A program made the translations under genes and the position numbers. This document shows positions 5,531 to 61,200 of a DNA stretch of 64,000 nucleotides, piece by piece. Within the stretch, counting starts at the first letter, position 1, and each line of letters opens with the position of its first letter. The DNA is taken from NCBI RefSeq assembly GCF_044704955.1, contig NC_091999.1, forward strand, positions 11,098,001 through 11,162,000, written 5' to 3'. Below the pieces are notes generated by a model. That model had not been told where the DNA came from and ran no database searches. It worked only from the letters and a program-made list of their open reading frames with translations. The DNA comes from Pristiophorus japonicus. Taxonomy: Eukaryota.

Positions 5531-6249
5531 CCGGAATAAATACAGACGGGCACAAAATGATTGATATCCTGAGGAGGATATTGATGTATCTTCAGTTGGC
5601 AACATTTTCAGATGAATGAGGAACAGACTCGATGAAAACTATTCCAGCATTGGATTCATTACGCCTCATCAATGCGCCAACATTTTTAGCAATCTGTCAG
5701 ACAACTCCTGAAGTTCATATGACAACTGCACCCACTCATCCCTGAGTCACAGGTTGTTTTTCATATCTTGCTTCCCTTCTGGACACAATCAGCACAGCCA
5801 CATTCACTCAGTGCAATCTATTTGCTTCCGTCTTTAACTGATGAGTACAGCACCCTGAACGGATAGAAATATAAACTTCACGTTGTTTGGACAGCATATC
5901 GTTCACTCTTTTAAGATGCAACGGTGTCTCAATTCTCTAAACTGGTGCAATCTATAAGCTGGTGGCAGGAAACGGAAACAGTTACTGTTCTACATGTATC
6001 ATAAGGGGCTCCAATTACAGGAGCTGCTCACTGACCCACTGGTGATATAAAGTTTAATGTAGACAGCCAGTCAGTCCTGGGGTATGCGAACACAACGATA
6101 GGGTAAATTATAAAAACGCCACTTGTTATATGAATGAAATTGGGAATGATTGACACGTTTCAGCAGAATGGGAGGAGACGAGGTGCAGATGGATCAGAGG
6201 AAGGTGTCAGGTGACTATTTATTTATTCTCCCTCCCACTTTACCAGCCC

Positions 6250-6560
6250 CGCTCACAGCTTCCATTTGCTTCTCTCATTCTGACCCAGCATGCAGGCCCT
6301 GAGTTATTGCAGAGATTGCTCCCGCCGTTATTTGTTTCACATTGGTTAGGTCAACAATGCAGTTGAGTGAATATCAGTATTTCTGCTCCGACAGAGAATT
6401 TCCGTGACTGCAGATATCCAGACTCAAGGGTAGCATGTGGAACCGTCTCGCAGCGCTCCTCATCATTATATCACTTCTGAGTAATTTTACATTCCCAGAA
6501 AAAAATCCATCCTCTCCCTGACTATTTTAACCCAGGTGTTATTATTGGTAAATTGATAGC
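6250..6560 (+). pseudogene. Orphan family B V promoter plus leader exon with no V exon
   Basis: ATG at 6435, MWNRLAALLIIISLL, GT donor at 6481. Upstream sequence matches that of the V at 9057. It ends within the intron. Confidence 0.8.
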
Positions 6561-6839
6561 AGTGCTGATTCTGCATGAAACACGTCAACTCTTTTCTCTA
6601 CTTTGCAACATTTTTAGGTTCTGAATTGCAAACACTCGATGGTTTCTCCTTTCCTCGATTGAACATGTATTTTCCGACCTGAATCATGGAGATTGTGTCA
6701 CTCTGACGCTGTCTTCAAGAGTGAAGAAAGAAGCAGAAGTGCAGACTTGTCGTTGGTTTTGTTTCGTCGCCATTTAAAGAATCTCCCTGTGATTCTGACT
6801 GTGGAGGCTGAATTATTGCTTCTGGGTCTCGGTGTGAGA

Positions 6840-6853
6840 GCGCCGTCTGGTGC
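6840..6853 (-). promoter_or_regulatory. CTCF-like motif 3' of RSS
   Basis: Minus strand GCACCAGACGGCGC versus core CCASYAGRKGGCRS, 24 nt beyond the nonamer. Confidence 0.6.
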
Positions 6854-6877
6854 GCAGCAACTGGAACTCTCAGCGTG

Positions 6878-6917
6878 AGTTTTTGTAAGGGTTCCACTAT
6901 AACTCTGCAGCAGTGTG
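6878..6917 (-). other. RSS with 24-bp spacer
   Basis: CACACTG + ctgcagagttatagtggaaccctt (24 nt) + ACAAAAACT. Confidence 0.85.
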
Positions 6918-7420
6918 GGCGCCATGGCACAGAAATACACGGCGGTGTCGGAGATCTGGGCTTTGCCGATCGTGAGCTCGGTAATCTTGGTAGATTTAGT
7001 AAACGTAGAGTAGAATCGATCAGTGATGTCACTGTTCCTGTATACATCCCCTCCGAGAAGACGAAGCATGTACTGTGGAGGCTTCCCGGGGTGCTTACTG
7101 TACCAGTACACATAAGGGGCATTATCGCTTGTTTTGAAGGTGCAGGTCAGCGTGACATTACTTTCCTCTTCAATTGTCATTTCAGGGACCAGCTGTTCCA
7201 CTGTGTCTTGGTGGCTCCATTCTAAAATAAAATAATTGTAATCATCACAATCTTCACCGTCACCATTATCACAATCCCAATCAACATCATCATCAACATC
7301 ATTTTACCAATAAGAACAGCTGAGTAACGTGAGTCCAGGTGAGAATTGATTTTTAATGAGAAGGAAAGACTTACTGAGAAGTAATATAATGATCAAGAGT
7401 GCCGTCAGGTGGTTCCGCAT
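6918..7420 (-). CDS. TCR alpha/delta V segment, family B, apparently intact (leader 7420-7375, V exon 7221-6918)
   Basis: MRNHLTALLIIILLL|KWSHQDTVEQLVPEMTIEEESNVTLTCTFKTSDNAPYVYWYSKHPGKPPQYMLRLLGGDVYRNSDITDRFYSTFTKSTKITELTIGKAQISDTAVYFCAMAP. GT/AG intact. Both Cys and the Trp are present. Confidence 0.9.
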
Positions 7421-7675
7421 GATGCTCCCTCAATCTGCAGTCCGGGAAATCCTCTGTGGGAGCGGAATTGCAGATCCCCACGCTATGGCAATGCTGATCA
7501 CTCCAATGCAAACAGGGAGCAGCGGCAGCAATCTCTCCAATAACACAGGGCTAGCAAGGCGTGCCAGAGCGAGAGCGGCAAATGGAAGCTGTGGGTGGGG
7601 CTGCTGTAGGCAGTGTTACTGCAAGATTTGTCTCGAGAATTTCCGGGTGATTATGGTGAGAAACATGTGACCACG

Positions 7676-7689
7676 GCGCCCTCTGACGG
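7676..7689 (-). promoter_or_regulatory. CTCF-like motif about 260 nt upstream of V leader
   Basis: Minus strand CCGTCAGAGGGCGC. Conserved at 30592-30605 and 56136-56149. Confidence 0.55.
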
Positions 7690-8146
7690 TGACACTGGCG
7701 ACTTCACAAAGTCAGGATAATGGGCAGAGAAAAGTGTGAGTTCATCGATGGGGTGGTTTCCAGTGGCCTATTATTTGGAGAGTATTATTTCAGACAATTC
7801 AACTGTATAAATCAGCGGAAGTGAAATGTGAGTGAATGTAAAGGAAAGAACATGTTTTTCCTATTAGCGTTGTCCTTCTCTCATTATTTATCACCTTCTT
7901 TCATTTCTTTTTCCCCCTTTTCCCATTTGCTGTGCTCTACACTCTCACTATTGCATGGCTTTCTCTCTTTGTCGTTCACATTCTTTCTTTCATACTTCAC
8001 TTTCCTTTCCTCTAGCTATGTTTCAAACTCTGTTCATTTCTCACATTTCTTTCAATCTTTCTCTTCTCCAATTCCCAATTGTTCTCTGATTCTATGAGCT
8101 GTTTCGGTGCTGTACATTCCATGTAATTCTTAAATTTTGACGAAAG

Positions 8147-8451
8147 GTGCCCAGAGATTGGCCCAGACTTGCCTGTGAATTCACAGTGGAATTTACTTCT
8201 TTCAGAATCCAGCGCGGGTTCAGCACGAACGACAACATCTGTTGGTACAGCCGACTGGAGAGCGTGGCCCCGAGATACATCCATTTTGGAATCAAAGCAG
8301 AACGTTACCAAATCCGGTTTGAGATCCACACCAACCGGCATCAAAGTCTGAGCACACTTGGCTTCGGCCAGGCAGAGTTTGTGGATACCGGAACCTCTTG
8401 CTGTGCTGCAGGCCTCAGTTTGGGGAAGAGCCCCGCTCTCGTACAGCTTCT
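8147..8451 (+). pseudogene. Divergent V pseudogene (psiVx copy 1) with decayed RSS
   Basis: GFSTNDNICWYSRLESVAPRYIHFGIKAER..RFEIH..LSTL..DTGTSCCAAG, then CTCAGTT + 22 nt + ACAGCTTCT. No first Cys or leader recognised. Confidence 0.75.
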
Positions 8452-9056
8452 TCTCACTGAGCAAAGTCTCAATAGATTGGGTGACAGTCAAATCGGTTCC
8501 GAAAACGACCAGTTCAAATAAGGGCAGTGGTCTATCCGCAATTATATTATTCGATACAAATTAAGATGAAATTCCTTTTGATTTCACATTTCAGCTCATT
8601 AATGTTATACATTTCCAAACAGTTTAGTTCTCTTTCCCATCGATTATTTCAGCACCTGCTTTTAACCCAGTTCACTGTTGAAGATTTCAGAAACTGTTGA
8701 ATAATGTAATTATTTTGAAATTCTTGTCGCCAATCTGCCTGCCCCGAACTTGAAATAAATGTGAAATTAACTCAGCTCTTAATGAGCATAAGGGTTGTAT
8801 AATTTACAAATGAGACATTATTCTGAATTCTGTTCTCGCAGGCGTGTGACAACACTGCCCGCGACAGACATGCCAAAAGCTTCCATTTGCTATTGTCGCT
8901 CTTCCCCGCCTTGCCTGCCCTGTGTAATTTGAGAGATCGCTGTCGCTGCACCCTGCTTCACATTGGTTTGACCAGTAGTGCAGTGGAGTGGGGATCTGTA
9001 TTGCTGCTCCGACAGAGGATTTCAAGCAGTGCAGAGTTACAGACTCATGGAGCATC

Positions 9057-9513
9057 ATGTGGAACCGTCTCGCATTGCTCCTCATCATTATATTACTTCT
9101 CAGTAAGTATTTCCTTCGCAAAAATAACGATCCTGACCCTGATGGTATTATTGGTAAAGTGATAATGAAGATGATAAAGATGATGACTATTACTATAATT
9201 TTATTTCCGAATGAAGCCAACAAGACACAGTGGGACAATCTGTTGTCGAAATGATGGTTGAAGAGGAAAGTAATGTCACACTAAACTGTACCTTGAAAAC
9301 CAGCCATCCTAGCCTTTCTGTGTTCTGGTACAGTCAGCAACCCGGGCAGCCCCCACAGTACGTGTTTTACCTTTTTGCAGTGGCAGTAAAACGAAACCCT
9401 GACTTCACTGACCGATTCTCTTCTGCGTTTCATAAAACGATTAAGATTACCGAGCTAACGATCAGCAAGGCCTTGATCTCAGACACCGCCGTGTATTTCT
9501 GTGCCACGAGCCC
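9057..9513 (+). pseudogene. TCR alpha/delta V, family B, probable pseudogene (V core open)
   Basis: Leader 9057-9102 intact. Acceptor AG changed to CG (9208-9209) and in-frame TGA at 9212-9214. The rest is open: CTLKTS..VFWYSQQPGQPPQY..SDTAVYFCATSP. Confidence 0.85.
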
Positions 9514-9553
9514 CACACTGGTGCAGAGATCTAGCGGACCCCGTGCAAAATCC
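9514..9553 (+). other. RSS with 24-bp spacer
   Basis: CACACTG + 24 nt + GCAAAATCC, followed immediately by CACAGTG (9554-9560). Confidence 0.8.
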
Positions 9554-9577
9554 CACAGTGGGAGTTCCAATCAGTGC

Positions 9578-9591
9578 TCACCAGAGGGCGC
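9578..9591 (+). promoter_or_regulatory. CTCF-like motif 3' of RSS
   Basis: TCACCAGAGGGCGC, 24 nt beyond the nonamer. Confidence 0.7.
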
Positions 9592-9884
9592 TCTCACACT
9601 GACAAACAAAAGCGATAATTCAGCCTCCACAGTGAGATTCACAGGGACTTTCTTAAAAGTTCAATTGAACACAATCCTTAACAAGAACCGGTGACGTTCA
9701 CCGGTGGAATTATATTAGCTGGTGATTTTAAAGCATATTTAAAATAGAAATACACTGCGCAAAGGCATCAATGCCCTTTCCGTGCATGCCTGTCCCATCT
9801 TACCCCTTGTCTCCAGTTTTTATCCATAATTATTTGATATCTCTTCTTCCTTCTTTTAGTTTAACGATGTAAAACCTTTGCTTC

Positions 9885-24202: not shown

Positions 24203-24634
24203 ATGTTCTCAGCAAGTTACTTTCTGACAATAATGTTCATGCTGTCCGGTGGGTACATGTGAAAATGATGAGTGTGTATTTCATGGGTTACGTGTATAGC
24301 CAGACTTCTCACATATGCTCTATGTTGTTACAGGAACAAGTCGCCAAGCATTAGTGTCCCAGGATCCATCTGAATTAACGGTTCCAGAAGGAAATACCAT
24401 AATACTGAGTTGCACTTACTCGGAAGCTGCTATAACTCTGTTCTGGTACATTCAGTATCACGGGGAAGCTCCGAAATATTTACTGAAGAGAGATAGCTCG
24501 GCGACGGTCGGCCAGTCTGCAGATTTGCCAGAGCGGTTCTCTGCTGTTTTGCACAGTGACAACAAAACGGTTCCTTTAACTATCATCGGAATTCTTGTCT
24601 CCGACACCGCCATGTATATCTGTGCTATGAGGTC
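24203..24634 (+). CDS. TCR alpha/delta V segment, family A-like, apparently intact (leader 24203-24248, V exon 24334-24634)
   Basis: MFSASYFLTIMFMLS|GTSRQALVSQDPSELTVPEGNTIILSCTYSEAAITLFWYIQYHGEAPKYLLKRDSSATVGQSADLPERFSAVLHSDNKTVPLTIIGILVSDTAMYICAMRS. GT/AG intact. Confidence 0.9.
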
Positions 24635-24673
24635 CACACTGCTGCAGAGAGAAAGCGCATCCGTACAAAAACC
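24635..24673 (+). other. 23-RSS with consensus nonamer
   Basis: CACACTG + 23 nt + ACAAAAACC, followed immediately by CACACTG (24674-24680). Confidence 0.92.
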
Positions 24674-24697
24674 CACACTGAATATTCCAGCTTGTGT

Positions 24698-24711
24698 CTG
24701 CCAGAGGGCGC
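24698..24711 (+). promoter_or_regulatory. CTCF-like motif 3' of RSS
   Basis: CTGCCAGAGGGCGC, 24 nt beyond the nonamer. Confidence 0.7.
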
Positions 24712-25509
24712 TCTCTCACAGATAAACAGCAGTGATAATTCAGCATCCACAGCGAACGTCATGGGAATCTCCTTAAAAGGGCGACAAGTCACAATATTCA
24801 ATAAAACATGTGGAGTCCTCATGAGGAATTTGTTGATGATTTCAACTCGTATTTATAATAAAAACGTACTTTGCAAGACACGTATGAGCCGACTAATCTC
24901 ACCTTTTGTCCTTTCCCTATTGTCTCCAATTCTGGGCACCACATGTTAGCAAGGATACAATGGAGCTTTACCAGCGAGTAGGGACGTCAGCTTTGTGGAG
25001 AGATTGGAGAAGCTCGGGTTGTACACTTGAAAGCACAGAAGTATCAGGGCAGACCTGATAGAGGTATTGAACATTATGAGGGGTTTAAGTAGAGCAGGTT
25101 GGAAGAAACCACATCTCCTTCAAACTGAATCGCTGTAACCAGCTCCTCTGAGCCTGAGTCTGCACAACTAACACCTGCAGATGTTTAGCAATCGATAACT
25201 TTAAACTTTTATCATTGTATTATAACTGGATATCTTCAAGGTAATGGAATATACAGCAAATACGGGACAATGCACAAAAAGGGAAGATTCTCTATGTCAG
25301 TCACACGTGCAAGAGAGATGATTATATAACTGTAAAACTTTACAAGTTAAGAGAGCCGCAGGTGTGATGAATGAATAAAAAGTAACAGCCAACGTGTTTG
25401 CAGGGAGATTATGGCCGATTTCAACCTACGGGTTGAACCTGAAATATTTTAATCAAGGCTTGAAAAGATATTAAATAATAACTGACGTGCATTCATGACA
25501 GTGTCAGCA

Positions 25510-28248: not shown

Positions 28249-28676
28249 TTAAACTGGTGCAATGTATATGGTGGGGGCAGGAAAGGGAATCATTTAATGT
28301 TGTATATGTATCAATAGAGGTTCCCATTACAGAAGCTGCTCACTGACCTTTAGATCTACTCACTGCTGATATAAGGTTTAATATAGACAGCCAGCGGGTC
28401 CTGTGGCATTTGAACACAACGACACGGTAATTTATACAAACGTCAGCTGTTACATGAATGAAATTGGGAATGACTGAGATGTTTCAGCAGAATGAGAGGA
28501 TGCGAGCAGCGAATAGATCAATGATGCTACGGTGAGCTGATCTTGAAAATATTGACATCATGTCATTAATTAGATTTTAAATATTTTAATATTAAGTATT
28601 CAATAAGGGAACTGAATGGTGTTGTCCGTCTGCAACTCGCCCTCACACTGAAAAAAAGAGTGAATACATCTGCCCA

Positions 28677-28690
28677 ATGCCCTCTGGTGG
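28677..28690 (-). promoter_or_regulatory. CTCF-like motif (intergenic)
   Basis: Minus strand CCACCAGAGGGCAT. Confidence 0.5.
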
Positions 28691-29169
28691 CAAATCCCTA
28701 AATCTACCAGATACAAATCCTGCCTTCTTGCAGTTCACAAGATCACTGAGAAAGAGTGAAGCTTGTCGGCTTGTCTTTTCTCATCCACCAGAGAAATCCT
28801 AACTCCCACTGCTCATTATAGCCTCATTCGTTTCCTGAAACGATTCTAGCGTATTTACCTCCTGCTCTCAATATTCCACACATTAATCACTCCGTGTGTG
28901 TGCGAAGAATTTCCTGATACCTGTCCTGAAGTGACTTATTATACATTGAATCCGTGTCTCCAGGTTCAACTTCCACATTTCAGTGTAAATTAATATTGGG
29001 AGTTAGTTCTTAATGCTGTCAATCCTCTCGGGGTCATTTCAGTCGTGCGCTGGGATACAATGCTGTTTACGTCAGCTCCGGTGCCCATCTCATTCATCAT
29101 TCATCCTCAGAGGAAGGGATCAGGCGACTATTTATTTCTTCTCCTCCCATTTTACTAGCCTCACTCAAA

Positions 29170-29480
29170 CCTTCCATTTGCTTCTCACACTTTGACCCAC
29201 CGTCCCTGCCCTGAGTTATTGAAGTGATTGCAACTGCAGTCCCTTGGTTGATATTTGTTGGATGAACAGTGCAGTAAGGCAGTCATCTGTATTTCTGCTC
29301 CGACAGAGGATTTCCTGGACTGGAGAGATCCAGACTTAGGGGCATCATGCAAAACTGTCCCGCACGTCACCTCATCATTATAGCACTTCTCAGTAAGTAA
29401 GACCTACCCAGAAAAAAATCGATTCTTCACCTGACTGCTGCAACCCAGGGGTTATTATTGGTAATTTGATGGTGGCGCTG
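29170..29480 (+). pseudogene. Orphan family B promoter plus leader (copy 2)
   Basis: ATG at 29347, decayed leader to 29392, GTAAGT donor, no V exon. Confidence 0.75.
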
Positions 29481-29789
29481 ATTCTGCATCAAACACGTTT
29501 CCTCTTATCTCTAATAGCACCATTCTTAGGTTCAGAATTGCAAACACGCGATACTCTGCCTTTTCTCCGTTTGAAAATGTATTTTCAGACCTGAATCATG
29601 GAGATTCTGTCACTCCGACGCTGTCTTCAAGAGTGAAGTCTGAAGCAGAAGGGAAGACTTATTGTTGGTTTTGCTTTCTTGCCCTTTTAAGAATCTCCCC
29701 GCGACTCTGACGGCGGAGGGTGAATTATTGCTTCTGATTATCGTATCAGACCGCCATCTGGTGTGGAGCAACTGGAACTCTGTAGTTTG

Positions 29790-29829
29790 CGTTTTTGTAC
29801 GGGATCCACGATAACTTTGGAGAAGTGTG
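29790..29829 (-). other. RSS with 24-bp spacer
   Basis: CACACTT + 24 nt + ACAAAAACG. CTCF-like ACACCAGATGGCGG at 29764-29751. Confidence 0.8.
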
Positions 29830-30329
29830 GGCTCCACGGCACAGAAATACACGGTGATGTCGGAGATCAGGTTTTGCTGATCGTGAACTCGGTAATCTTT
29901 TTAATTTTAATAAACGTTGAGAAGAATCGATCAGTGATGTCAGTGTTCCTGTATACATCCCCTCCCAGAAGATGAAGACGTATTGTGGAGCCTTCCCATC
30001 GTGCTGAATGTAGCAGTACACATAAGGGTTAGTATCGCTTCTTTTCAGGGTGCAGGCTTGTGTGACATTAGTTCGCTCCTCAACCATCATTTCAGGGACC
30101 GGCTGTTCCACTTTGTTTTGATTGCTCCATTATAAAAGAAAATAATACAATGAATCATCATGATTATCATCACCATCATCTCAATGAACATAATCATAAT
30201 CATCAATATCATGTTACCTATAGTAACACCTGAGATACAGTATTCAGGGGAGGAATAATTTTTAATGGGCAGGAAGTACTTACTTAGAAGTGATATAACA
30301 ATGAGCAGCGATGCAAGACGGTTTCGCAT
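29830..30329 (-). pseudogene. TCR alpha/delta V pseudogene, family B
   Basis: Leader 30329-30284 MRNRLASLLIVISLL. Acceptor AG changed to AT, Trp changed to Cys (YCYIQ), and frameshifts. Ends VYFCAVEP. Confidence 0.88.
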
Positions 30330-31049
30330 GACGCTCACTCAGTCTGTAACTCTGCAGTCCTGGAAATCCTCTGTGGGAACAGAATTAAAGATCCCCGCCC
30401 CACTGCACTGCTGATCCCACCAAAGCCAACAGGGAGCAGCGGCAGCAATCTCTCCAATAACACAGGGCTGGCAAGGCAGGTCAGAGCAAGAGCGGAAAAT
30501 GGAAGCTGTGGGCGGGACTGCCGTGGGCAGTGCTACTGCAAAATTTGTCAATGTAATTCCAGTTGATAACGGCGAGAGACATGTGACCACAGCGCCCTCT
30601 GACAGTGACTCTGAGGACTTCAAACAGAGTAAAGTGTGAGTTGATCGATGGGGTGGTTTCCAGCGGTCAGTTGTGCGAATTCAACTGTCTAAATAGGCAG
30701 AAGCGAAATGTGAGTGAATGTAAAGCAAAGGATATTTTACTTTATTTCTGAATATGTGGATGGCTTTCTGTTACCTATTCACGCTGTCCTTATTACGTTA
30801 CTTATCACCTTCTTTCAGTTCTCTTTCCCCGCTTTTCTCATTTGCACTTTCATTATTGCACGGCTTTATCTCTTTGTCTTTCTCATTCTTTCTTTCATAC
30901 TTTCACTTTCTTTCGCTCTACCTAAGTTTCCAGCTCTTTTCATTCATCACTTTATTTAAATCTTTCTGTTCTCTATTTCCTAATTGTTCTCTGATTCTGT
31001 GAGCTCTTCCTGTGCTGTACATTCCATGTAATTCTTACATTTTGTCGAA

Positions 31050-31364
31050 AGGTGCACTGAGTTTGGCCCAGATTTGTCTAACTGACTGAGACTTGGATGC
31101 GGAAGGAAATCCTTTCAGAATCCAGCGCGGCATCAGCACGACCGACAATATCTGTTAGTACAGCCGACTGGTGAGCGCGGCCCAGAGATACATCCGTTGT
31201 GGATTCAAAGCAGAACGCCACCAAGGCTGGTTTGAGATCCACACCGAGTTGGATCAAATTCTGAGCACACTGGGCTTTGGCCAGGCAGAGTTGGCGGATT
31301 TCTGAACCTATTGCTGTGCTGCGGGCCACAGTGTGGGGAAAAACCCCGCTCTTGTACAACTTCT
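31050..31364 (+). pseudogene. Divergent V pseudogene (psiVx copy 2)
   Basis: Homologous to 8147-8451, with Trp changed to TAG. Ends TYCCAAG + CACAGTG (31327-31333) + 22 nt + ACAACTTCT. Confidence 0.75.
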
Positions 31365-31959
31365 CCTCTCTGAGCAAATTCTGAATAGATTGGGTCACAG
31401 TCAAATCGATTCCGAAAACGGCCAGTTCAGTCCAAGGGCAGTGGTCTATACGCAATTATATTTCGTAATATAAATTAAGATGAAATTCCTTTTGATTTCA
31501 CATTTCAGCTCATTGAAGTATTACATTTCCTTACAGATGTGTTCTCTTTCCCATCGCTTATTATAGCACCTGGTTTTAACCAACTTTACTGTTAAAGATT
31601 AAGGTAACTATTGAATAATGTAATCATGTAATAATTCTAGAATTCCTTTCGCCAATCAGCTAGACTCGAATATGTGATGAATGTGGAACTAACGCAGCTC
31701 TTATCGAGAGGATGAGTTGAAAATTTGAGAAGGGGACTTTATTATAAATCGATGCTACGTGTGACAACGCTATCCGTGACAGCCACACCCACAGCTTCCT
31801 TTTGCTGCTGTCGCTTTGCCCCGCCTTGCCTGCCCTGTGTAATTGGAGAGATCACTGTCGCTGTTCCCTGCTTCACATTGGTTGGACCAGCAGTGCAGTG
31901 GAGCGGTGATCTATATTGCTGCTTCAACAGACAGCAGAGTTACGAACTCAGGGAGCATC

Positions 31960-32417
31960 ATGTGGAAACGTCGCGCACTGCTCGCCATAATTATATCACT
32001 TCTCAATAAGTATTTCCATCACAAAATAATAATTCTTCCCCCAATATTATTATTGGTAAATTGATAATGAAGATGATAATGTGATGATGACTATTACTAT
32101 TATTTTACATTAGAATGGAGCCAACAAGACACAGTGGAACAGTCGGTTCTCGAAATGAAGGTTGAAGAGGAAAGTAATGTCACACTAAACTGCACATTGA
32201 AAACCAGCTATTCTAGCCCGTATGTTTTCTGGTACAGTCAGCACCCTGGGCAGCCCCCACAGTAGGTGTTTTATCTGTATGGATCGAGATTAAACCTAAA
32301 CCCCAATTTCACTGAGCGATTATCTTCGGCATGTCATAAATCTTCCAAGATAACTGAACTAACGATCTGCAAGGCCGTGATCTCAGACAGCGCCATGTAT
32401 TTCTGTGCCATGATTCC
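31960..32417 (+). pseudogene. TCR alpha/delta V pseudogene, family B
   Basis: Leader 31960-32005 with donor GT changed to AT. V exon 32114-32417 with TAG at 32263-32265. Ends SDSAMYFCAMIP. Confidence 0.88.
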
Positions 32418-32457
32418 CACACTGGTGCAGAGAGACAGCGCATCCCGCACAAAAACC
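32418..32457 (+). other. RSS with 24-bp spacer and consensus nonamer
   Basis: CACACTG + gtgcagagagacagcgcatcccgc (24 nt) + ACAAAAACC. CTCF-like TCACCAGAAGGCGC at 32482-32495. Confidence 0.88.
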
Positions 32458-33061
32458 GACACTGAGAGTTCCAGACAGTGCTCACCAGAAGGCGCTCTCA
32501 ACCTGTTAAACAGAAGCGATAATTCAGCTTGAGATTCACAGAGACCTTCTTAAATTGACAAATAAAACACAATTACTAACAAGAGACAGTGACGTCCACC
32601 GGTGGAATTATATTAGATGTGCATCTCACTCCTTGTCTCCAGTCTTTATGCAGAATCATTTGAATGTTCTTCTTCCTTTCTTTAGTTTAACAATGTAAAA
32701 CCTGTGCGTCAGCTCGTGTCTCTGGTTCTCTCGCTGCAGTTCTTTCCCTGTCACTCTATTTCACTATCTATCTTTTTCACTATCTCTATGGCTCTCCTCT
32801 CCAGCTGACTCTCTCTGCATGCATCTCATTAGATCCCTGTCTGTGTCTGTCTATCACCCTCTCTTTCTGTCGCTCTGTCTCTCATCGTGTCCCTTTTTCT
32901 TTATCACTCTCTCACGCTCCCTCCGTTCTTCACTCTGTCTCTCTCTCTCTGTCGCAATCTCTCATTGTTTCACTCTCTTATTATCTCTCACTCTCTTCCC
33001 CTCTGTTTATTTCAATCTGTTTCTCTATTTATTTCTCTACACCTGTCTCTCCCTATATTTC

Positions 33062-54859: not shown

Positions 54860-55095
54860 GATTGCTGTCACCGTTCGTTATTTGACATTGCAGACCAGTG
54901 GACATCTGTATTTCTGCTCCGACGGAGGATTTCTCGCACTGCAGAGTTAAAGACTGAGTGAGTATCATATGGAATCACCTGATACCAGTCCTCATCATTA
55001 TATCACCTCCCAGTAAATAATAACTTCCGGAAAAAATGCATTATCCCCCACACTGCTGTAACCCAGGTGTTATTATTGTTCAATTGATGGTGTTA
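54860..55095 (+). pseudogene. Orphan family B promoter plus leader (copy 3)
   Basis: Leader homolog at 54967-55012 with ATG changed to ATA. No V exon. Confidence 0.7.
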
Positions 55096-55375
55096 ATGAT
55101 GGTCGATCAAATACATTTCTTCTTTTCTCTAATTTGCAACAAGCTTAAGGTCTGAATTGCAAACAGTCGACATTCTGTCCGTTCGCTGTTTGAACATCTA
55201 TTTTCAGACCAGAATCATGGATAATCTGTCACCCAGACGCTGTCTTCAAGAGTGAAGACAGAAGCAGAAGGGGAGACTTGTTGTTGGTTTTGTTTTCTCT
55301 CCCTTTTAAGAATCTCCCTGTGACTCTGACTGTGGAGAATTATTGCTTCTGATTATCGGTGTGAGAGCACCCTCT

Positions 55376-55922
55376 GGTTTTTGTATGCAGTCGGCGATAA
55401 CTCTTTAGCTCATGGCACAGAAATACATGGCAGTGTCAGAGGTCAGGGCTTTGCCGATCGTTAGCTCGGGAATCTTGGCAATTTTATTAAAAGTAGAAGA
55501 GAATCGATCAGTGAAGGCGGGGTTTAGGTCTACAATCACTCCGATAAAATGAAGCCCCTACTGTGGAGGCTTCCCATGGTGCTGAATGTATCAGAACACA
55601 GAAGGGGCAGTATCGCTGGTTTTCAAGGTGCAGGTTAGTGTTACATTACTTTCCTCCTCAACCATCATTTCAGGGATCGGCTGTTCCATGTTGTCTTGTT
55701 GCCTCCATTCTGTCAGAAAATAATAAAAATAATCATCATGATCATCATCACCATTGTCTAACTCAACATAATCATAATCATCAATATTATTTTACCAATA
55801 ATATTTTACCAATAATAACACCTGAGTTACAGCAGCCCGTGGGAAAAATAATGGTTAATAGGCAGGAAATACTTACTTAGAAGTGATATAACAATGAACA
55901 GCGGTGCAAGACCGTTCTGCAT
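55376..55922 (-). pseudogene. TCR alpha/delta V pseudogene, family B, heptamer deleted
   Basis: Leader 55922-55877. V exon 55709-55408 with Trp changed to TGA and Tyr to TAG. Ends SDTAMYFCAMS, then spacer and ACAAAAACC with no heptamer. Confidence 0.88.
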
Positions 55923-56619
55923 GATGCTCCCTGAGTGTGCCACTCTGCCATCCGGGAAATCCTCTGTGAGATCAGAATTACAGATCACCACGCCACTGCA
56001 CCGATGCCAACAGGGAGCAGCGGCAGTAATCTCTCCCATAACACAGGTCTGGCAAGGTGGGTCTGAGCGAGAGCGGCAAACTAAAGCTGTGCGGGGGGCT
56101 GCAGTGGTCAGTGTTACTGCAAAATTGTGACCACGGCGCCCTCTGACAGTAATTCTGCGGACTTCACACAGTCAGGATAATGGGCAGAGTACATTGTGAG
56201 TTCATCAATCGGGTGGTTTCCAGCGGCCTATTATTTGCACATATTTATATTGTTTCAGACAATTCAACTGTCTAAATATGCAGAAGGGAAATGTGAGTGA
56301 AGGTAAGGACATTTTACTTTCTTTCTGAATATGTTTATGGCATCCTCTTACCTATTAGTGCTGACCTTCCATCGTTACTCATCACCTTCTTTCGGATTTT
56401 CTAAATTGCTGTCCTCTAAACTTTCATTATTGCACTGCATTGTCTCTTTGTCTTTCTCATTCTTTCTTTCATACTTTCACTTTCTTTTCCTCTATCTATG
56501 TTTCGAACTCTGTTCATCACTCACATTCTTTAAATCTTTATCTTCTCTATTTCATAATTGTTCTCAGATTCTATCGGCTGTTTCAGTGCTGCACATTCAT
56601 GTAATTCTTAAATTTTGTC

Positions 56620-56938
56620 GAAATGTACACCGAGATTCGCCCAGATTTCTCTACCTGCCTGAGACTTTGCATTGGAAGGAAATCCTGTCAGAATGCAGTG
56701 CGGGTTCAGCAGGACTGACAACATCTGTTGGTACAGCCGACTGGTGAGCGCGGCCCCGAGATACATCCATTGTGCAATTCAAAGCAGAATGTCACCGAGT
56801 CCGGTTGGAGGTCCACACCAACCGGTATCAAAGTCTGAGCACACTCGGCTTCGGCCACGTGGACTTGGCAGATACCGGAACCTATTGCTGTGCTGCGGGC
56901 CACAGTGTGGGTAAAAGCCCCGCTCCCGTTCAATTTCT
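56620..56938 (+). pseudogene. Divergent V pseudogene (psiVx copy 3)
   Basis: GFSRTDNICWYSRLVSAAPRYIH/..FKAE..LADTGTYCCAAG + CACAGTG (56901-56907) + 22 nt + TCAATTTCT. Confidence 0.75.
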
Positions 56939-57242
56939 CCTCTCTGACAAAGCCTGGATAGATTGGGTAACAGTCAAATCGGTTCCCAATGCGACCGGTT
57001 CAGTCAAAGGGCGGTTGTCAAACCGCAATTATATTATTCAACAGAAATTAAGATGAAATTTATTTTTTAAATTCACATTTCAGCTCATTAATGTTCTACA
57101 TTTCCTGACAGTTTTGTTCTCTTTCCCAGCGCTTATTCAGCACCTGGATTTGACCCACTACACTGTTGAAGATTTCGGTAACTGTTGAACAATGTAATAA
57201 TTTTGCAATTCCTGTCGCCAATCAGTTTGCCCCGAATTTGTA

Positions 57243-58284: not shown

Positions 58285-61200
58285 AGAGTCCGGGGATCGG
58301 CTGCAGTTCGAGAGGCGGAGCAGCAGTGTGGATGAGGCATACAATGACCCAGTGTGTGTTGTGTATGCATGCCTGTTTACTGTGTGGTGTCTGTAATACT
58401 GTTATGCAACACTGAATGTACCCTTACACTGTACACACCTTGCCTGTGCACAAGAGGGTGCTGCTGTTGGAGACCTAAGAGTTACCTGCACACTGCAGGT
58501 AACCCAGTATAAAAAGGAACACATAGCTTGTTATCTGCACTCAGGAGCTGCAAAGACAGGACTCCAGGTCTACACAGTTTAAGTATCATACCCTGCATCG
58601 TGGAGTCACTGAAGGTGCCTACATACGCAGCAGCGGGAGTCCGGGGATCGGCGGCAGTTCGAGAGGCGGATCAGCGTGTGTAAAGCCGAAAAAGCCCCAC
58701 CGGGAGTTCGGGGATCGGTGGCAGTTCGAGAGGCGGAGCAGCAGCGTGGGTGAGGCCTATAAAGGCCGACTGGTGCAGCTGAAGCAGGGTCAGAAGGCAA
58801 AAAATAAGTAGAAAGAAATCTAAAGTGGGTAAAGTGATTGGCTGGAGATTGGTAAATAGTTTTTCTTTTTCTATTCTATCTCAGTAAGTAAGGTTTATCA
58901 TTGCTGTTACCAATATAATCTGGGGGTTACATCATGGCAGGACAGCTCAGACACGTGCTATGCTCCACCTGTACTATTTGGGAAGTCAGGGACGCTTCCT
59001 TGGTCCCTGACGACTACGTGCATGGGAAGTTTATCCGGCTGCAGCTGCTGATGGACAACATTGCGGCGCTGGAGCTGTGAGTGGATTCACTCTGGAGCAT
59101 GCACGATGCTGCGAATGACGTGAATAGCAAGTTTCGTGAGTTGGTCTTAGCGCAGGAAAAGATTACTCAGGCAGATAGTGAATGGAGGACCAACAGGAAG
59201 AGCAGTGATAGGAACGTAGTGAAGGGGTCCCCTGCGGTCATCCCTTTGCAAAACAGAAACACCACTTTGGGTACTGTTGAGGGGGATGACTCACCAGTGG
59301 AGGGCAGCAGCAGGCAAGTTCATTGCACGGTGGGTGGCTCTGCTGCACAGGAGGGCATGAAAAAGAGTGGGAGAGCTGTTGTGATAGGAGATTCAATTGT
59401 AAGAGGAAAATATAGACGTTTCTGCGGCCGCAACCGAGACTCCAGGATGGTATGTTGCCTCCCTGGTGCAAGGGTCAAGTATATCTCGGAGCGGGAGCAG
59501 GGCATTCTGAAAAGGAAAGGTGTGCAGCCAGTTGACGGGGTGCATATAGGCACCAAAGATATTGATAAAAAAAGGGATGAGGTTCTACAAGACGAGTTTA
59601 GGGAGCTAGGAGGTAAATTAAAACGTAGGACCTCAAAAGTAGTAATCTCAGGATTGCTACCAGTGCCACGTGCTAATCAGAGGAGGAATCGCAGGATAGC
59701 TCAGATGAATACGTGGTTTGAGGAGTGGTGTAGCAGGGAGGGATTCAAATTCTTGCTACATTGGAACCAGTTCTGGGGGAGGTGGGACCAGTACAAACCG
59801 GATGGTCTGCACCTGGGCAGGACTGGATCCATTGTCCTAGGTGGAGTGTTTGCTTGCGCTGTTGGGGAGGACTTAAAGTAATACAGCAGGGTGATGGGAA
59901 CCTATGCAGGTAGAGAGAGGGAAGTAGAATTGGGGCAGAAGCAAAAGATAGAAAGAAGAAAAGTAAATGTGGAGGGCAGATAAACCTAAGGTTAAAAGCA
60001 AAAAGGACCACAGTACAGTAAAATTCTAAAAAGGCAAAGTGTGTTAAAAAGACAAGCCTGAAGGCTCTGTGCCTCACTGCGAGGAGTGTTCACAATAAGG
60101 TGGACGAATTAACTGCGCAGAGAGCAGTTAATCGGTATGATGTAATTGGCATCACGGAGACACGGCTGCAGTGTGACCAAGGCTGGGAACTCAACATCCA
60201 TGGGTATTCAACATTTAGGAAGGATTGACAGAAAGGAAAAGGAAGTTTGGTGGCATTGCTGGTTAAAGACGAAAGTAATGCAATATTAAGAAAGGACATT
60301 AGCTTGGATGATATGGAATCGGTTTGGGTGGTGCTGCGGAATACCAACGGGCAGAAAACGCTCGTGGGAGTTGTGTACAGATCACCAAACAGTACTGGAA
60401 AGTTTGGGGACAGAATCAAACAAGAAATTATGGATGCATGCAATAAAGGTACAGCAGTTATCATGGGTGACTTTAATCTACATATTGATTTGGCTAACAA
60501 AACTGGTAGCAATGCGGTGGAGGAGGATTTCCTGGAGTGTATGAGGGATATATTTCCAGACCAATTTGTCGAGGAACCCTACCAGAGAGCTGGCCATTCT
60601 AGACTTGGTGATGTGTAATGAGAAAGGACGAATTAGCAATCTTGTTGCGCGAGAACCCTTGAGGAAGAGTGACCATAACATGGTAGAATTCTTCATTCGA
60701 ATGGAGAGTGACACAGTTAATTCCGAATCTAGGGTACTCAACTTAAGGAAAGGTAACTTGGTTGGTTTGAGGAGTGAATTGGCTCGAGTAGACTTGCAAA
60801 TGATACTTAAAGAGTTGATGGTTTAAAGGCAATGGCAAACATTTAAACATCACATGAATGAATTTCTGCAATTGTTCATCGCTGTCTCGAGTTAAAATAA
60901 AATGGGGAAGGTGGTTAAACCGTGGCTAACAAGGCAAATTAAGGATAGTGTTAAACCCAAGGAAGAGGCATATACATTGGCCAGAAAAAGCAGCAAACCT
61001 GACGACTGTGAGAAATTTAGAATTCAGAAGAGGAGGACAAAGAGTTTAATTATGAGGGGACAATAGAGTCCGAGCAGAAGCTTGCCGGGAACATAAAAAC
61101 TGACTGCAAAAGTTTCTATAGATATGAGAAGAGACAAATATTAGTGAAGACAAACGTAGGTCACTTGCAGTAGGATTCATGTGAATTTATAATGGGGAAC

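What the first reader, a model, noticed from the sequence alone, without database searches (positions are those of the whole stretch)
6840..6917. Fixed RSS-CTCF cassette behind shark TCR V segments
Seen: five V genes have a CTCF-core-like 14-mer 24-25 nt beyond the nonamer, oriented with the V (6840-6853, 9578-9591, 24698-24711, 29751-29764, 32482-32495). A remnant is at ~55367-55378. In four of them AGTTCC lies 9 nt before the core, resembling the CTCF upstream (ZF9-11) motif and its spacing. Established: RSS-adjacent CTCF elements promote RAG scanning and usage of proximal mouse Igh VH genes, whereas mammalian Tcra V CTCF sites are mostly promoter-associated. Inference: loop-extrusion control with RSS-coupled CTCF sites may operate in a cartilaginous-fish TCR locus, either ancestrally or by convergence. 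Caveat: the copies are paralogous, so they are not independent evidence.
Basis: partly seen in the sequence, partly recalled or inferred. Interest (0 to 1): 0.78.

Follow-up and report, generated by a model that had tools for sequence, protein, structure and literature searches.

The report
CTCF-like site behind V-gene RSSs
Five related T-cell-receptor-type V gene segments carry a good match to the binding motif of the chromatin-looping protein CTCF about 24 bases past their recombination signal, as some mouse antibody V genes do, but all five copies descend from one ancestral flank and nothing here shows that CTCF binds them.

Summary
Five of the 12 V-like segments in the window carry a CTCF-core-like motif on the V strand, 24-25 nt past the nonamer. 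Four of them have AGTTCC 9 nt upstream of it. A sixth, broken V keeps a remnant. With a recalled JASPAR matrix all five score p<1e-4 and three score p<1e-5. The AGTTCC matches the 3' half of the published upstream motif at a published spacing.

All copies share one ancestry. Family A is an 855-bp inverted duplication, later triplicated in tandem. One family-B V acquired the FR3-end, RSS and flank block from family A. The other six V-like segments have no such motif.

The motif window ranks 210th of 721 and CpG retention is ordinary. A retention simulation is only suggestive (P=0.075). Two of three pseudogenes keep the motif. V genes point both ways, 6 to 6, which fits a simple mouse-Igh scanning model poorly.

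Verdict: a credible candidate RSS-adjacent CTCF element supported by motif evidence only. The scan noted the same feature in many other windows of this genome. I could not check those notes.

The parts
6838..6856 (-). CTCF-like 19-mer behind V A1a (open V exon). U-like AGTTCC at 6863-6868, nonamer 6878-6886, 24-bp spacer, heptamer 6911-6917.
   Evidence: (score 12.4, p=1.1e-5). A contig with 0 differences spans it.
9575..9593 (+). CTCF-like 19-mer behind V A2a (open V exon), the best of the five. Heptamer 9514-9520, nonamer 9545-9553, U-like AGTTCC 9563-9568.
   Evidence: (score 18.1, p=4.2e-7).
24695..24713 (+). CTCF-like 19-mer behind chimeric V B1. The body is family B; the FR3 end, RSS and flank are of family-A type. 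Heptamer 24635-24641, 23-bp spacer, nonamer 24665-24673, TATTCC 24683-24688.
   Evidence: score 11.9, p=1.5e-5; body 0.68-0.69 identical to family B and 0.52-0.54 to A; flank 0.60-0.66 to A and 0.46-0.47 to B; RSS 0.88 to A2b.
29749..29767 (-). CTCF-like 19-mer behind V A1b, a frameshifted pseudogene with heptamer CACACTT. U-like AGTTCC 29774-29779, nonamer 29790-29798, heptamer 29823-29829.
   Evidence: score 15.7, p=2.0e-6; three HSPs in different frames.
32479..32497 (+). CTCF-like 19-mer behind V A2b, which has an in-frame stop. Heptamer 32418-32424, nonamer 32449-32457, U-like AGTTCC 32467-32472.
   Evidence: (score 14.5, p=3.7e-6).
55365..55383 (-). Remnant behind pseudogene A1c. The heptamer is deleted. 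A second deletion fuses the nonamer to the core and removes the U-like part. The core CpG has become TpG.
   Evidence: (score 7.9, p=8.7e-5).
6773..7617 (-). A1a arm of the 855-bp inverted duplication (promoter, leader, intron, V exon, RSS, 3' flank) that carries the cassette. The partner arm is 8851-9658(+). The homology ends about 67 bp past the core.
   Evidence: 72.5% identity over 855 bp.
6806..6820 (-). Conserved island AGCRATAATTCAG about 25 nt 3' of the core. It is present in all cassette copies (9615-9621, 24735-24741, 29722-29728, 32519-32525, 55337-55343 mark its ATAATTC) and is more conserved than the CTCF-like core. Function unknown.
   Evidence: (the window at column 885 has 3 changes against 8 for the CTCF window).

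Best explanation
The 14-mers are the core of a two-part (upstream motif plus core) CTCF-type binding site. The site stood in the 3' flank of the founder of one V family and has travelled with the RSS ever since.

Shown:
- The founder unit was duplicated in inverted orientation, giving subfamilies A1 and A2.
- The A1(-)/Vx(+)/A2(+) triplet was then copied at least three times in tandem.
- Once, the block 'FR3 end + RSS + flank' was transferred onto a family-B V body.

Inferred:
- CTCF binds with zinc fingers 9-11 on AGTTCC, starting about 9 nt after the nonamer, and with fingers 3-7 on the core.
- Its N-terminal, cohesin-blocking side would then face away from the V gene.
- Cohesin extruding from the 3' side would stall with the RSS held next to the anchor, raising that V's contact with the recombination centre, as at mouse proximal VH genes.

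No step after 'motif present' is demonstrated.
For: - Motif strength: 5 of 5 sites at p<1e-4 and 3 of 5 at p<1e-5.
- Window-wide excess of CTCF-like motifs: 23 against 8.4+-3.1, with 0 of 100 shuffles reaching 23.
- A sense-strand hit of p about 4e-7 to 4e-6 within a roughly 26-nt span, together with AGTTCC at an allowed spacing, has a chance of order 1e-7 to 1e-8 per flank (my arithmetic p-values).
- The conservation pattern is bipartite. TTCCA is invariant, the 6-7 nt linker is the most variable stretch, and CCAGA.GGCG.TCT is invariant in 5 of 5 copies. This fits a non-specific ZF8 linker (PMC12885311 passages).
- In the older A1-A2 comparison the 19-mer is 0.856 identical. The intron is 0.71, the RSS spacer 0.60, the post-nonamer stretch 0.67 and the post-core stretch 0.77.
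- The observed substitutions damage the motif less than random ones would: P=0.075 for all five keeping p<1e-4, and P=0.006 at the post-hoc threshold.
- The N-terminal/ZF3 side lies 3' of the core as written (PMC12885311 passage).
- Mouse precedent: a CBE sits just 3' of the RSS of recombining proximal VH genes, and mutating it lowers usage (PMC7930373 and PMC10293834 passages).
- The CTCF two-part motif and an orientation code are reported in lamprey and skate. Shark CTCF resembles the mammalian protein (PMC7471279 passage).
Against: - There is one origin only, so five copies are not five observations.
- There is no excess conservation. The motif window has 8 parsimony changes in 19 columns. 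210 of 721 windows, and 94 of 334 non-coding windows, do as well or better. Within subfamilies it is 0.848 identical, against 0.75-0.87 for its neighbours.
- The motif CpG is kept in 4 of 5 family-A copies, against a mean of 0.66 for 17 ancestral CpGs.
- No copy has the consensus C at both matrix positions 4 and 5. Position 12 shows all four bases across the copies, including the disfavoured C and A.
- Two of three pseudogenes keep high scores (15.7 and 14.5). In mouse, pseudogenes lack the CBE.
- Six of the 12 V-like segments have no hit above score 2.8 within 170 nt.
- V segments lie 6(+) to 6(-). Half the sites would therefore face the wrong way for a single recombination centre. Mouse Igh and Tcra/d use almost only convergent RSSs (PMC10772921 passage).
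- Only the 3' six of the ten upstream-motif positions match.
- The matrix was recalled from memory.
- No ChIP or ATAC data exist for this organism among the runs served.
Confidence: 0.45

Rival explanations
1. Neutral hitch-hiker. A CTCF-like sequence was present in the founder flank, either by chance or as a site no longer used. It has simply been copied with the 855-bp duplication unit and is decaying at the neutral rate. It has no present role in recombination.
For: - The motif window is no more conserved than 29% of all windows of the unit.
- Within-subfamily identity equals that of the flanks.
- CpG retention is ordinary.
- Pseudogenes A1b and A2b keep it.
- The homology simply ends where the duplication ends.
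- Copies have drifted at informative matrix positions 4-6 and 12.
Against: - The chance of such a strong sense-strand core, plus AGTTCC at the right spacing, right behind an RSS is very small per flank (arithmetic).
- Substitutions are somewhat less damaging than random ones (P=0.075, or 0.006 at the post-hoc threshold).
- The older A1-A2 comparison shows the 19-mer as the best-kept non-coding stretch of the RSS neighbourhood after the heptamer.
- Unchecked notes of the scan report the same arrangement in many other windows, one of them in 'three unrelated flank types'.
Confidence: 0.35
2. The conserved post-RSS block serves another purpose. The AGTTCCA element, the core-like element and the AGCRATAATTCAG island could bind a different factor (CTCFL, another zinc-finger protein or a homeodomain-type factor), or could drive or stop germline or antisense transcription through the RSS. 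On this reading the CTCF resemblance is partial coincidence.
For: - The ATAATTCA island is more conserved than the CTCF-like core: 3 changes against 8 per 19 columns.
- An unchecked note describes a 'V-promoter module placed directly behind an RSS and pointing back into the gene' 15 kb beyond this window.
- The A2 copies have a conserved CRE-like palindrome about 95 nt past the core.
- Sharks have CTCFL (PMC7471279).
Against: No specific alternative motif was identified. The island lies too far from the core (about 25 nt) to be a CTCF downstream motif, but its presence does not argue against CTCF at the core. The core and upstream spacing fit CTCF specifically.
Confidence: 0.13
3. The site was delivered by a transposable element that carries a CTCF motif, as with SINE B2 in mouse or hAT elements in lamprey, and that landed next to an RSS in the founder gene.
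For: CTCF sites are known to spread on repeats in mammals and in lamprey (PMC5504073 passages).
Against: The flank has no copy in the window apart from the V-linked ones (blastn with word size 7). The homology is continuous with the V gene and its promoter.
Confidence: 0.05

Closest known systems
RSS-associated CTCF-binding elements (CBEs) of mouse Igh proximal VH genes (VH5-2/VH81X type)
   Same: A CTCF core motif lies directly 3' of the V RSS. It is co-oriented with the V gene and repeated over a family of neighbouring V segments (passages of PMC7930373 and PMC10293834). The proposed action is the same: stalling loop extrusion beside the RSS.
   Different: - The locus is of TCR alpha/delta type, not Igh.
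- The V segments point both ways (6 to 6).
- Pseudogenes keep the motif.
- No binding or usage data exist.
- The motif has a U-like half site that nearly abuts the nonamer.
- The exact mouse distance and orientation are recalled, not checked, because Jain 2018 is not held.
Two-part CTCF sites (upstream motif bound by ZF9-11 plus core bound by ZF3-7)
   Same: AGTTCC equals the 3' six letters of the CTGCAGTTCC consensus. It stands 9 nt from the core, against 8 nt in the IL3 +2.9 site. The linker is the most variable stretch.
   Different: The 5' four positions of the upstream motif do not match. Such sites make up only 13-15% of human CTCF sites, by the paper's statement. No footprint is available.
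Promoter-associated CTCF sites of mammalian Tcra/Tcrb V segments
   Same: Both are CTCF motifs spread through a TCR V array. This window also has CTCF-like motifs on the promoter side of the A1 genes (7674-7692 with weaker paralogues at 30590 and 56134; 30423 and 56004).
   Different: The sites studied here lie behind the RSS, not at promoters. The mammalian pattern is recalled, because Shih 2012 is not held.

Membership tests
RSS-associated CBE (mouse Igh proximal VH type) | Significant match to the CTCF core matrix | tested here: met
   5 of 5 at p<1e-4 and 3 of 5 at p<1e-5 with a recalled MA0139.1 matrix. 1-2 mismatches to CCASYAGRKGGCRS.
RSS-associated CBE (mouse Igh proximal VH type) | Position just 3' of the V RSS | tested here: met
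   24-25 nt from the nonamer to the 14-mer in 5 of 5 copies.
RSS-associated CBE (mouse Igh proximal VH type) | Orientation convergent with CBEs at the recombination-centre side | not testable with these tools
   The motif is on the V strand in 5 of 5 copies. The position of the D/J/C region is not in the window, and V segments lie 6(+) to 6(-).
RSS-associated CBE (mouse Igh proximal VH type) | CTCF occupancy in lymphocyte precursors | not testable with these tools
   Only 4 DNA runs of one sample hold the stretch. There is no ChIP, ATAC or RNA run among them.
RSS-associated CBE (mouse Igh proximal VH type) | Present at recombining V segments and absent at neighbouring pseudogenes | tested here: not met
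   Pseudogenes A1b and A2b score 15.7 and 14.5. The open V segments A1a, A2a and B1 score 12.4, 18.1 and 11.9. Only the RSS-less A1c has lost it.
RSS-associated CBE (mouse Igh proximal VH type) | Effect on V usage when mutated | not testable with these tools
   This needs repertoire data or genetics.
Functional (selected) transcription-factor site | Motif columns more conserved than neighbouring neutral DNA | tested here: inconclusive
   A1-A2 identity is 0.856 against 0.60-0.77 for the neighbours. Within subfamilies it is 0.848 against 0.75-0.87. Rank 210 of 721 windows. Retention P=0.075. CpG retention is not special.
Two-part CTCF site with upstream motif | Match to the 10-bp upstream consensus | tested here: inconclusive
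   6 of 10 positions match (the 3' AGTTCC) in 4 of 5 copies; B1 has TATTCC (consensus from passages of PMC12885311).
Two-part CTCF site with upstream motif | Spacing between the upstream motif and the core within the known range | tested here: met
   9 nt to the first core position in all copies. The IL3 site has 8 nt, and the stated range is a 2-7 bp linker plus a TGG-like triplet.

The most novel reading that the evidence does not exclude
V-co-oriented, two-part CTCF anchors that abut the RSS nonamer are an ancient jawed-vertebrate device for presenting V segments to RAG. On this reading they are shared by a cartilaginous-fish TCR alpha/delta array and mouse Igh. Because they flip with each V in a mixed-orientation array, they would act locally rather than by the convergent-loop rule, for example by positioning nucleosomes, holding the RSS at a stalled cohesin, or permitting inversional joins. 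RSS and CBE would move between V families as one exchangeable cassette, as in the B1 chimera.
Probability: 0.13. Interest if true: 0.85.

Novelty: new member of a known kind. Interest (0 to 1): 0.5.

Why it matters
RSS-associated CTCF elements are a central part of the loop-extrusion (RAG-scanning) model, which has been worked out almost wholly in mouse Igh. If they are bound in a cartilaginous fish TCR locus, the coupling of CTCF anchors to recombination signals dates to early jawed vertebrates or evolved twice. It would then also have to work in an array whose V genes point both ways. That makes an open question testable: is scanning or diffusion the ancestral mode of V choice? Three full-text searches for CTCF together with shark or cartilaginous-fish antigen-receptor terms found no paper on this (titles and abstract starts of the listed papers seen). 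As it stands, the window offers a well-defined candidate with exact coordinates for ChIP, EMSA and repertoire tests, but no demonstration.

Tried and rejected
- **Cross-species test.** A word search with a family-A V found no candidate. A degenerate cassette pattern found 0 matches in metagenome contigs. I did not use the big representative search, because V-set membership was already clear and the collection evidently lacks shark V segments.
- **Binding data.** The single run search gave 4 DNA runs of one sample. Laying them only confirms the sequence.
- **CpG protection as a sign of occupancy.** Not significant.
- **Excess conservation.** Not found.
- **TE origin.** There are no V-independent copies in the window.
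- **Second RSS behind the core.** I considered the CACAGTG 3' of the ATAATTCA island. The nonamer-like run has the wrong polarity, so I rejected it by inspection.
- **REST and ZNF143 resemblance.** I considered these by eye from recalled consensus sequences and dropped them as poor. No tool test was run.
- **Vx family.** The Pfam look-up stopped at an in-frame stop and was not pursued.
- **Papers and supplements.** Jain 2018 and Shih 2012 are not held. Supplementary files were not requested. Supplements of PMC12885311 (site tables) and of the mouse Igh papers (CBE lists) might refine the spacing and orientation comparison.

Full report
**What is in the window**

The window is a V-gene array. 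tblastn with V exons taken from the window finds 12 V-like segments:
- VB3 (exon end 870, -)
- A1a (6920, -)
- Vx1 (8413, +)
- A2a (9511, +)
- B1 (24632, +)
- A1b (29835, -)
- Vx2 (31326, +)
- A2b (32412, +)
- VC (45282, -)
- VB2 (46886, -)
- A1c (55408, -)
- Vx3 (56900, +)

Six lie on each strand. Three of them that I gave to Pfam are V-set domains, with E-values from 7e-13 to 3e-15. The nearest named relatives of VC are TCR-alpha-type V regions of reptiles and teleosts at 35-49% identity. Family A shares no word triplet with anything in the protein collection.

I could not confirm the organism. It is coded. 'Shark' rests on the scan's own notes, for example a NAR-TCR cassette noted 26.6 kb beyond the window. 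There is an N run at 18125-18535, which I left alone.

**The observation**

The layout in the V sense is as follows:
- heptamer CACACTG (CACACTT in A1b)
- a 24-bp spacer (23 bp in B1)
- the nonamer
- 9-10 nt
- AGTTCC (TATTCC in B1)
- 9 nt
- the 14-mer

The nonamer-to-14-mer distance is 24 nt, and 25 nt in A1b.

With a CTCF matrix written from memory (JASPAR MA0139.1 counts, unverified) the sites score as follows:

| Site | Score | p |
|---|---|---|
| A2a | 18.1 | 4.2e-7 |
| A1b | 15.7 | 2.0e-6 |
| A2b | 14.5 | 3.7e-6 |
| A1a | 12.4 | 1.1e-5 |
| B1 | 11.9 | 1.5e-5 |
| A1c remnant | 7.9 | 8.7e-5 |

The window holds 13 hits at p<=1.5e-5 against about 1.9 expected. The IUPAC core with up to 2 mismatches occurs 23 times, against 8.44+-3.08 in 100 dinucleotide-preserving shuffles, and none of the shuffles reaches 23. 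The excess shrinks but persists if paralogous hits are counted once (my count: 18).

The other six V-like segments (VB2, VB3, VC, Vx1-3) have no hit above score 2.8 on either strand within 170 nt of the exon end.

Contigs of four public runs, all from one sample, cover the stretch. One contig spans the A1a cassette without a difference.

**Ancestry of the copies**

Blocks 6194-9721 and 29107-32619 align at 78.6% over 3,599 bp. Blocks 6354-8752 and 54885-57240 align at 75.4%. So a triplet A1(-)/Vx(+)/A2(+) has been copied in tandem about every 23-25 kb.

Within a triplet, A1 and A2 are the arms of an 855-bp inverted duplication: 6773-7617 against 9658-8851, at 72.5% identity. It runs from the promoter through leader, intron, V exon and RSS, and it ends about 67 bp past the CTCF-like core. 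The conserved 3' flank is thus the tail of a duplication unit and needs no selection to explain its existence.

B1 is a chimera:
- Its V body is 0.68-0.69 identical to family B and 0.52-0.54 to family A.
- Its RSS is 0.88 identical to that of A2b.
- Its flank is 0.60-0.66 identical to family A and 0.46-0.47 to family B.

The true family-B flanks (VB2, VB3) have no motif. By inspection of the alignment, the switch lies in the last 25 or so nucleotides of FR3. The divergence of B1's block from family A (about 25%) is as large as that between A1 and A2, so the transfer is old.

All five sites therefore trace to one ancestral flank, carried by three old lineages: A1, A2 and B1.

**Is the motif under constraint?**

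Mean identity by segment:

| Segment | A1 vs A2 | Within subfamilies |
|---|---|---|
| Promoter | 0.747 | 0.839 |
| Leader | 0.727 | not compared here |
| Intron | 0.710 | 0.751 |
| V exon | 0.756 | 0.818 |
| Heptamer | 0.929 | not compared here |
| Spacer | 0.604 | not compared here |
| Nonamer | 0.812 | not compared here |
| Post-nonamer | 0.667 | not compared here |
| CTCF 19-mer | 0.856 | 0.848 |
| Post-core | 0.772 | 0.868 |

On a fixed tree of the five family-A copies, the 19 motif columns carry 8 parsimony changes. 210 of 721 windows of 19 columns do as well or better, as do 94 of 334 non-coding windows. The best non-coding windows are a promoter block and the AGCRATAATTCAG island 3' of the core, each with 3 changes.

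Of 17 CpGs ancestral to A1 and A2, 66% of copies are retained on average. The motif CpG is retained in 4 of 5 family-A copies, and it is lost as TpG in the RSS-less A1c.

Given the observed numbers of substitutions (0, 1, 2, 4, 4), I placed them at random positions. All five copies then stay above the p<1e-4 score in 7.5% of trials. They stay above the observed minimum, a post-hoc threshold, in 0.6% of trials.

Position 12 of the matrix shows all four bases across the copies, and no copy has the consensus C at both positions 4 and 5.

Taken together, the copies offer at most a hint of constraint, not a demonstration.

**What speaks for a real CTCF site**

The case rests on the quality and geometry of the ancestral sequence.
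- From passages of PMC12885311, the human upstream motif is CTGCAGTTCC-like and is bound by ZF9-11.
- It is separated from the core by a non-specific, nuclease-accessible linker that ZF8 bridges. The linker is about 8 bp, with a stated range of 2-7 bp plus a TGG-like triplet.
- The IL3 oligonucleotide printed in that paper has 8 nt between the two parts.
- Here AGTTCC is the 3' six of that consensus, at 9 nt.
- In the five-copy alignment TTCCA is invariant. The 6-7 nt after it are the most variable of the flank. CCAGA.GGCG.TCT is invariant.
- The same paper places the N-terminal/ZF3 side 3' of the core as written. A bound CTCF would therefore face away from the V gene, with ZF9-11 close to the nonamer.

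Other literature supports transferring the motif to this organism:
- The two-part motif is reported as identical in lamprey, chicken and human (abstract and passages of PMC5504073).
- Skate TAD boundaries carry inward-oriented CTCF motifs (passages of PMC10115646).
- Shark CTCF resembles the mammalian protein (passage of PMC7471279).

Mouse precedent: recombining proximal VH genes have a CBE just 3' of the RSS, pseudogenes there lack it, and mutating it lowers usage (passages of PMC7930373 and PMC10293834).

**What speaks against the full interpretation**

- Besides the weak conservation, two of the three pseudogenes keep strong motifs: A1b (frameshifts) and A2b (in-frame stop).
- Half of the V-like segments have no motif at all.
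- The V genes point both ways in equal numbers.
- In mouse Igh and Tcra/d, almost only convergent RSSs are used (passage of PMC10772921).
- If the shark locus scans linearly from one recombination centre, half of these sites face the wrong way. If it works by diffusion and inversion, the mouse Igh mechanism does not transfer directly.
- No ChIP, ATAC or RNA run for this organism was served.
- No other species could be reached.

**Earlier notes of the scan**

The same arrangement has been noted in many other windows of this genome, from about 1.1 Mb before to 0.5 Mb beyond this one and on another piece. One note speaks of 'three unrelated flank types'. One follow-up reached the same motif-only verdict. 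I could not read those windows, so these notes are leads and not support.

Within my own window I confirmed three things that other notes describe: the 24-bp spacers, a heptamer-like sequence directly after the nonamer, and a chimeric V with a family-A cassette.

**Verdict**

This is a credible candidate RSS-adjacent, two-part CTCF element. It is inherited as part of an RSS cassette within one V lineage. The evidence is at the level of motif and geometry only. In this window there is one evolutionary origin and no demonstrated constraint or binding.

Three full-text searches found no paper on CTCF sites in cartilaginous-fish antigen-receptor loci (listings seen).

Noticed in passing
window 6878-6917, 9514-9553, 29790-29829, 32418-32457 (B1: 24635-24673): All four family-A RSSs with a heptamer have a 24-bp spacer when the nonamer is read in the canonical ACAAAAACN register. 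The chimeric B1 has 23 bp.
   Followed up: partly
window 6871-6877(-), 9554-9560(+), 24674-24680(+), 32458-32464(+): A heptamer-like sequence (CACGCTG, CACAGTG, CACACTG, GACACTG) directly abuts the 3' end of the nonamer in the cassette copies. Its meaning is unknown.
   Followed up: no
window 24339-24790(+): V B1 is a chimera. The body is of family B (0.68-0.69 identity). The last ~25 nt of FR3, the RSS and the 3' flank are of family A (RSS 0.88 to A2b). This looks like an old gene-conversion or crossover event that moved RSS and flank together.
   Followed up: yes
window 6194-9721, 29107-32619, 54885-57240: A triplet of V genes, A1(-)/Vx(+)/A2(+), is tandemly repeated about every 23-25 kb at 75-79% identity. 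A1 and A2 are arms of an 855-bp inverted duplication. The third unit seems to lack its A2 member.
   Followed up: partly
window 8129-8413(+), 31034-31326(+), 56607-56900(+): The Vx family consists of V-like exons ending in ...YCCAAG. They are followed by CACAGTG (mutated in Vx1) but have no clear nonamer at 12 or 23 bp. Vx3 has an in-frame stop and Vx2 aligns in two frames. The nature of these segments is not established.
   Followed up: no
window 6806-6820(-) and equivalents (ATAATTC at 9615-9621, 24735-24741, 29722-29728, 32519-32525, 55337-55343): The island AGCRATAATTCAG lies about 25 nt 3' of the CTCF-like core. It is the most conserved non-coding stretch of the 3' flank (3 changes per 19 columns), better kept than the core itself.
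   Followed up: partly
window 28675-28693(-), 40245-40263(-), 59291-59309(+), 17524-17542(-), 7674-7692(-) with weaker paralogues 30590-30608(-) and 56134-56152(-): There are further strong CTCF-like motifs not next to an RSS. The best hit of the window (p=9e-8) lies 1.1 kb 3' of A1b. One conserved site lies about 320 bp upstream of each A1 start codon, co-oriented with A1. The overall motif density is about one per 5 kb.
   Followed up: partly
window 9687-9712(+) and about 32650(+): A CRE-like palindrome (CCGGTGACGTTCACCGGTGG type) is conserved between the two A2 flanks, about 95 nt past the core.
   Followed up: no
window 10800-10999: Summed contig depth jumps to about 6e5-9e5 here, with many loose ends and joints. 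This indicates a very high-copy repeat at this place.
   Followed up: no
window 9528-9533: Contigs of the same sample show alternative letters in the RSS spacer of A2a (G>T, C>A, A>T). These could be alleles or a near-identical paralogue. No alternative letter is listed inside the CTCF-like motif.
   Followed up: no
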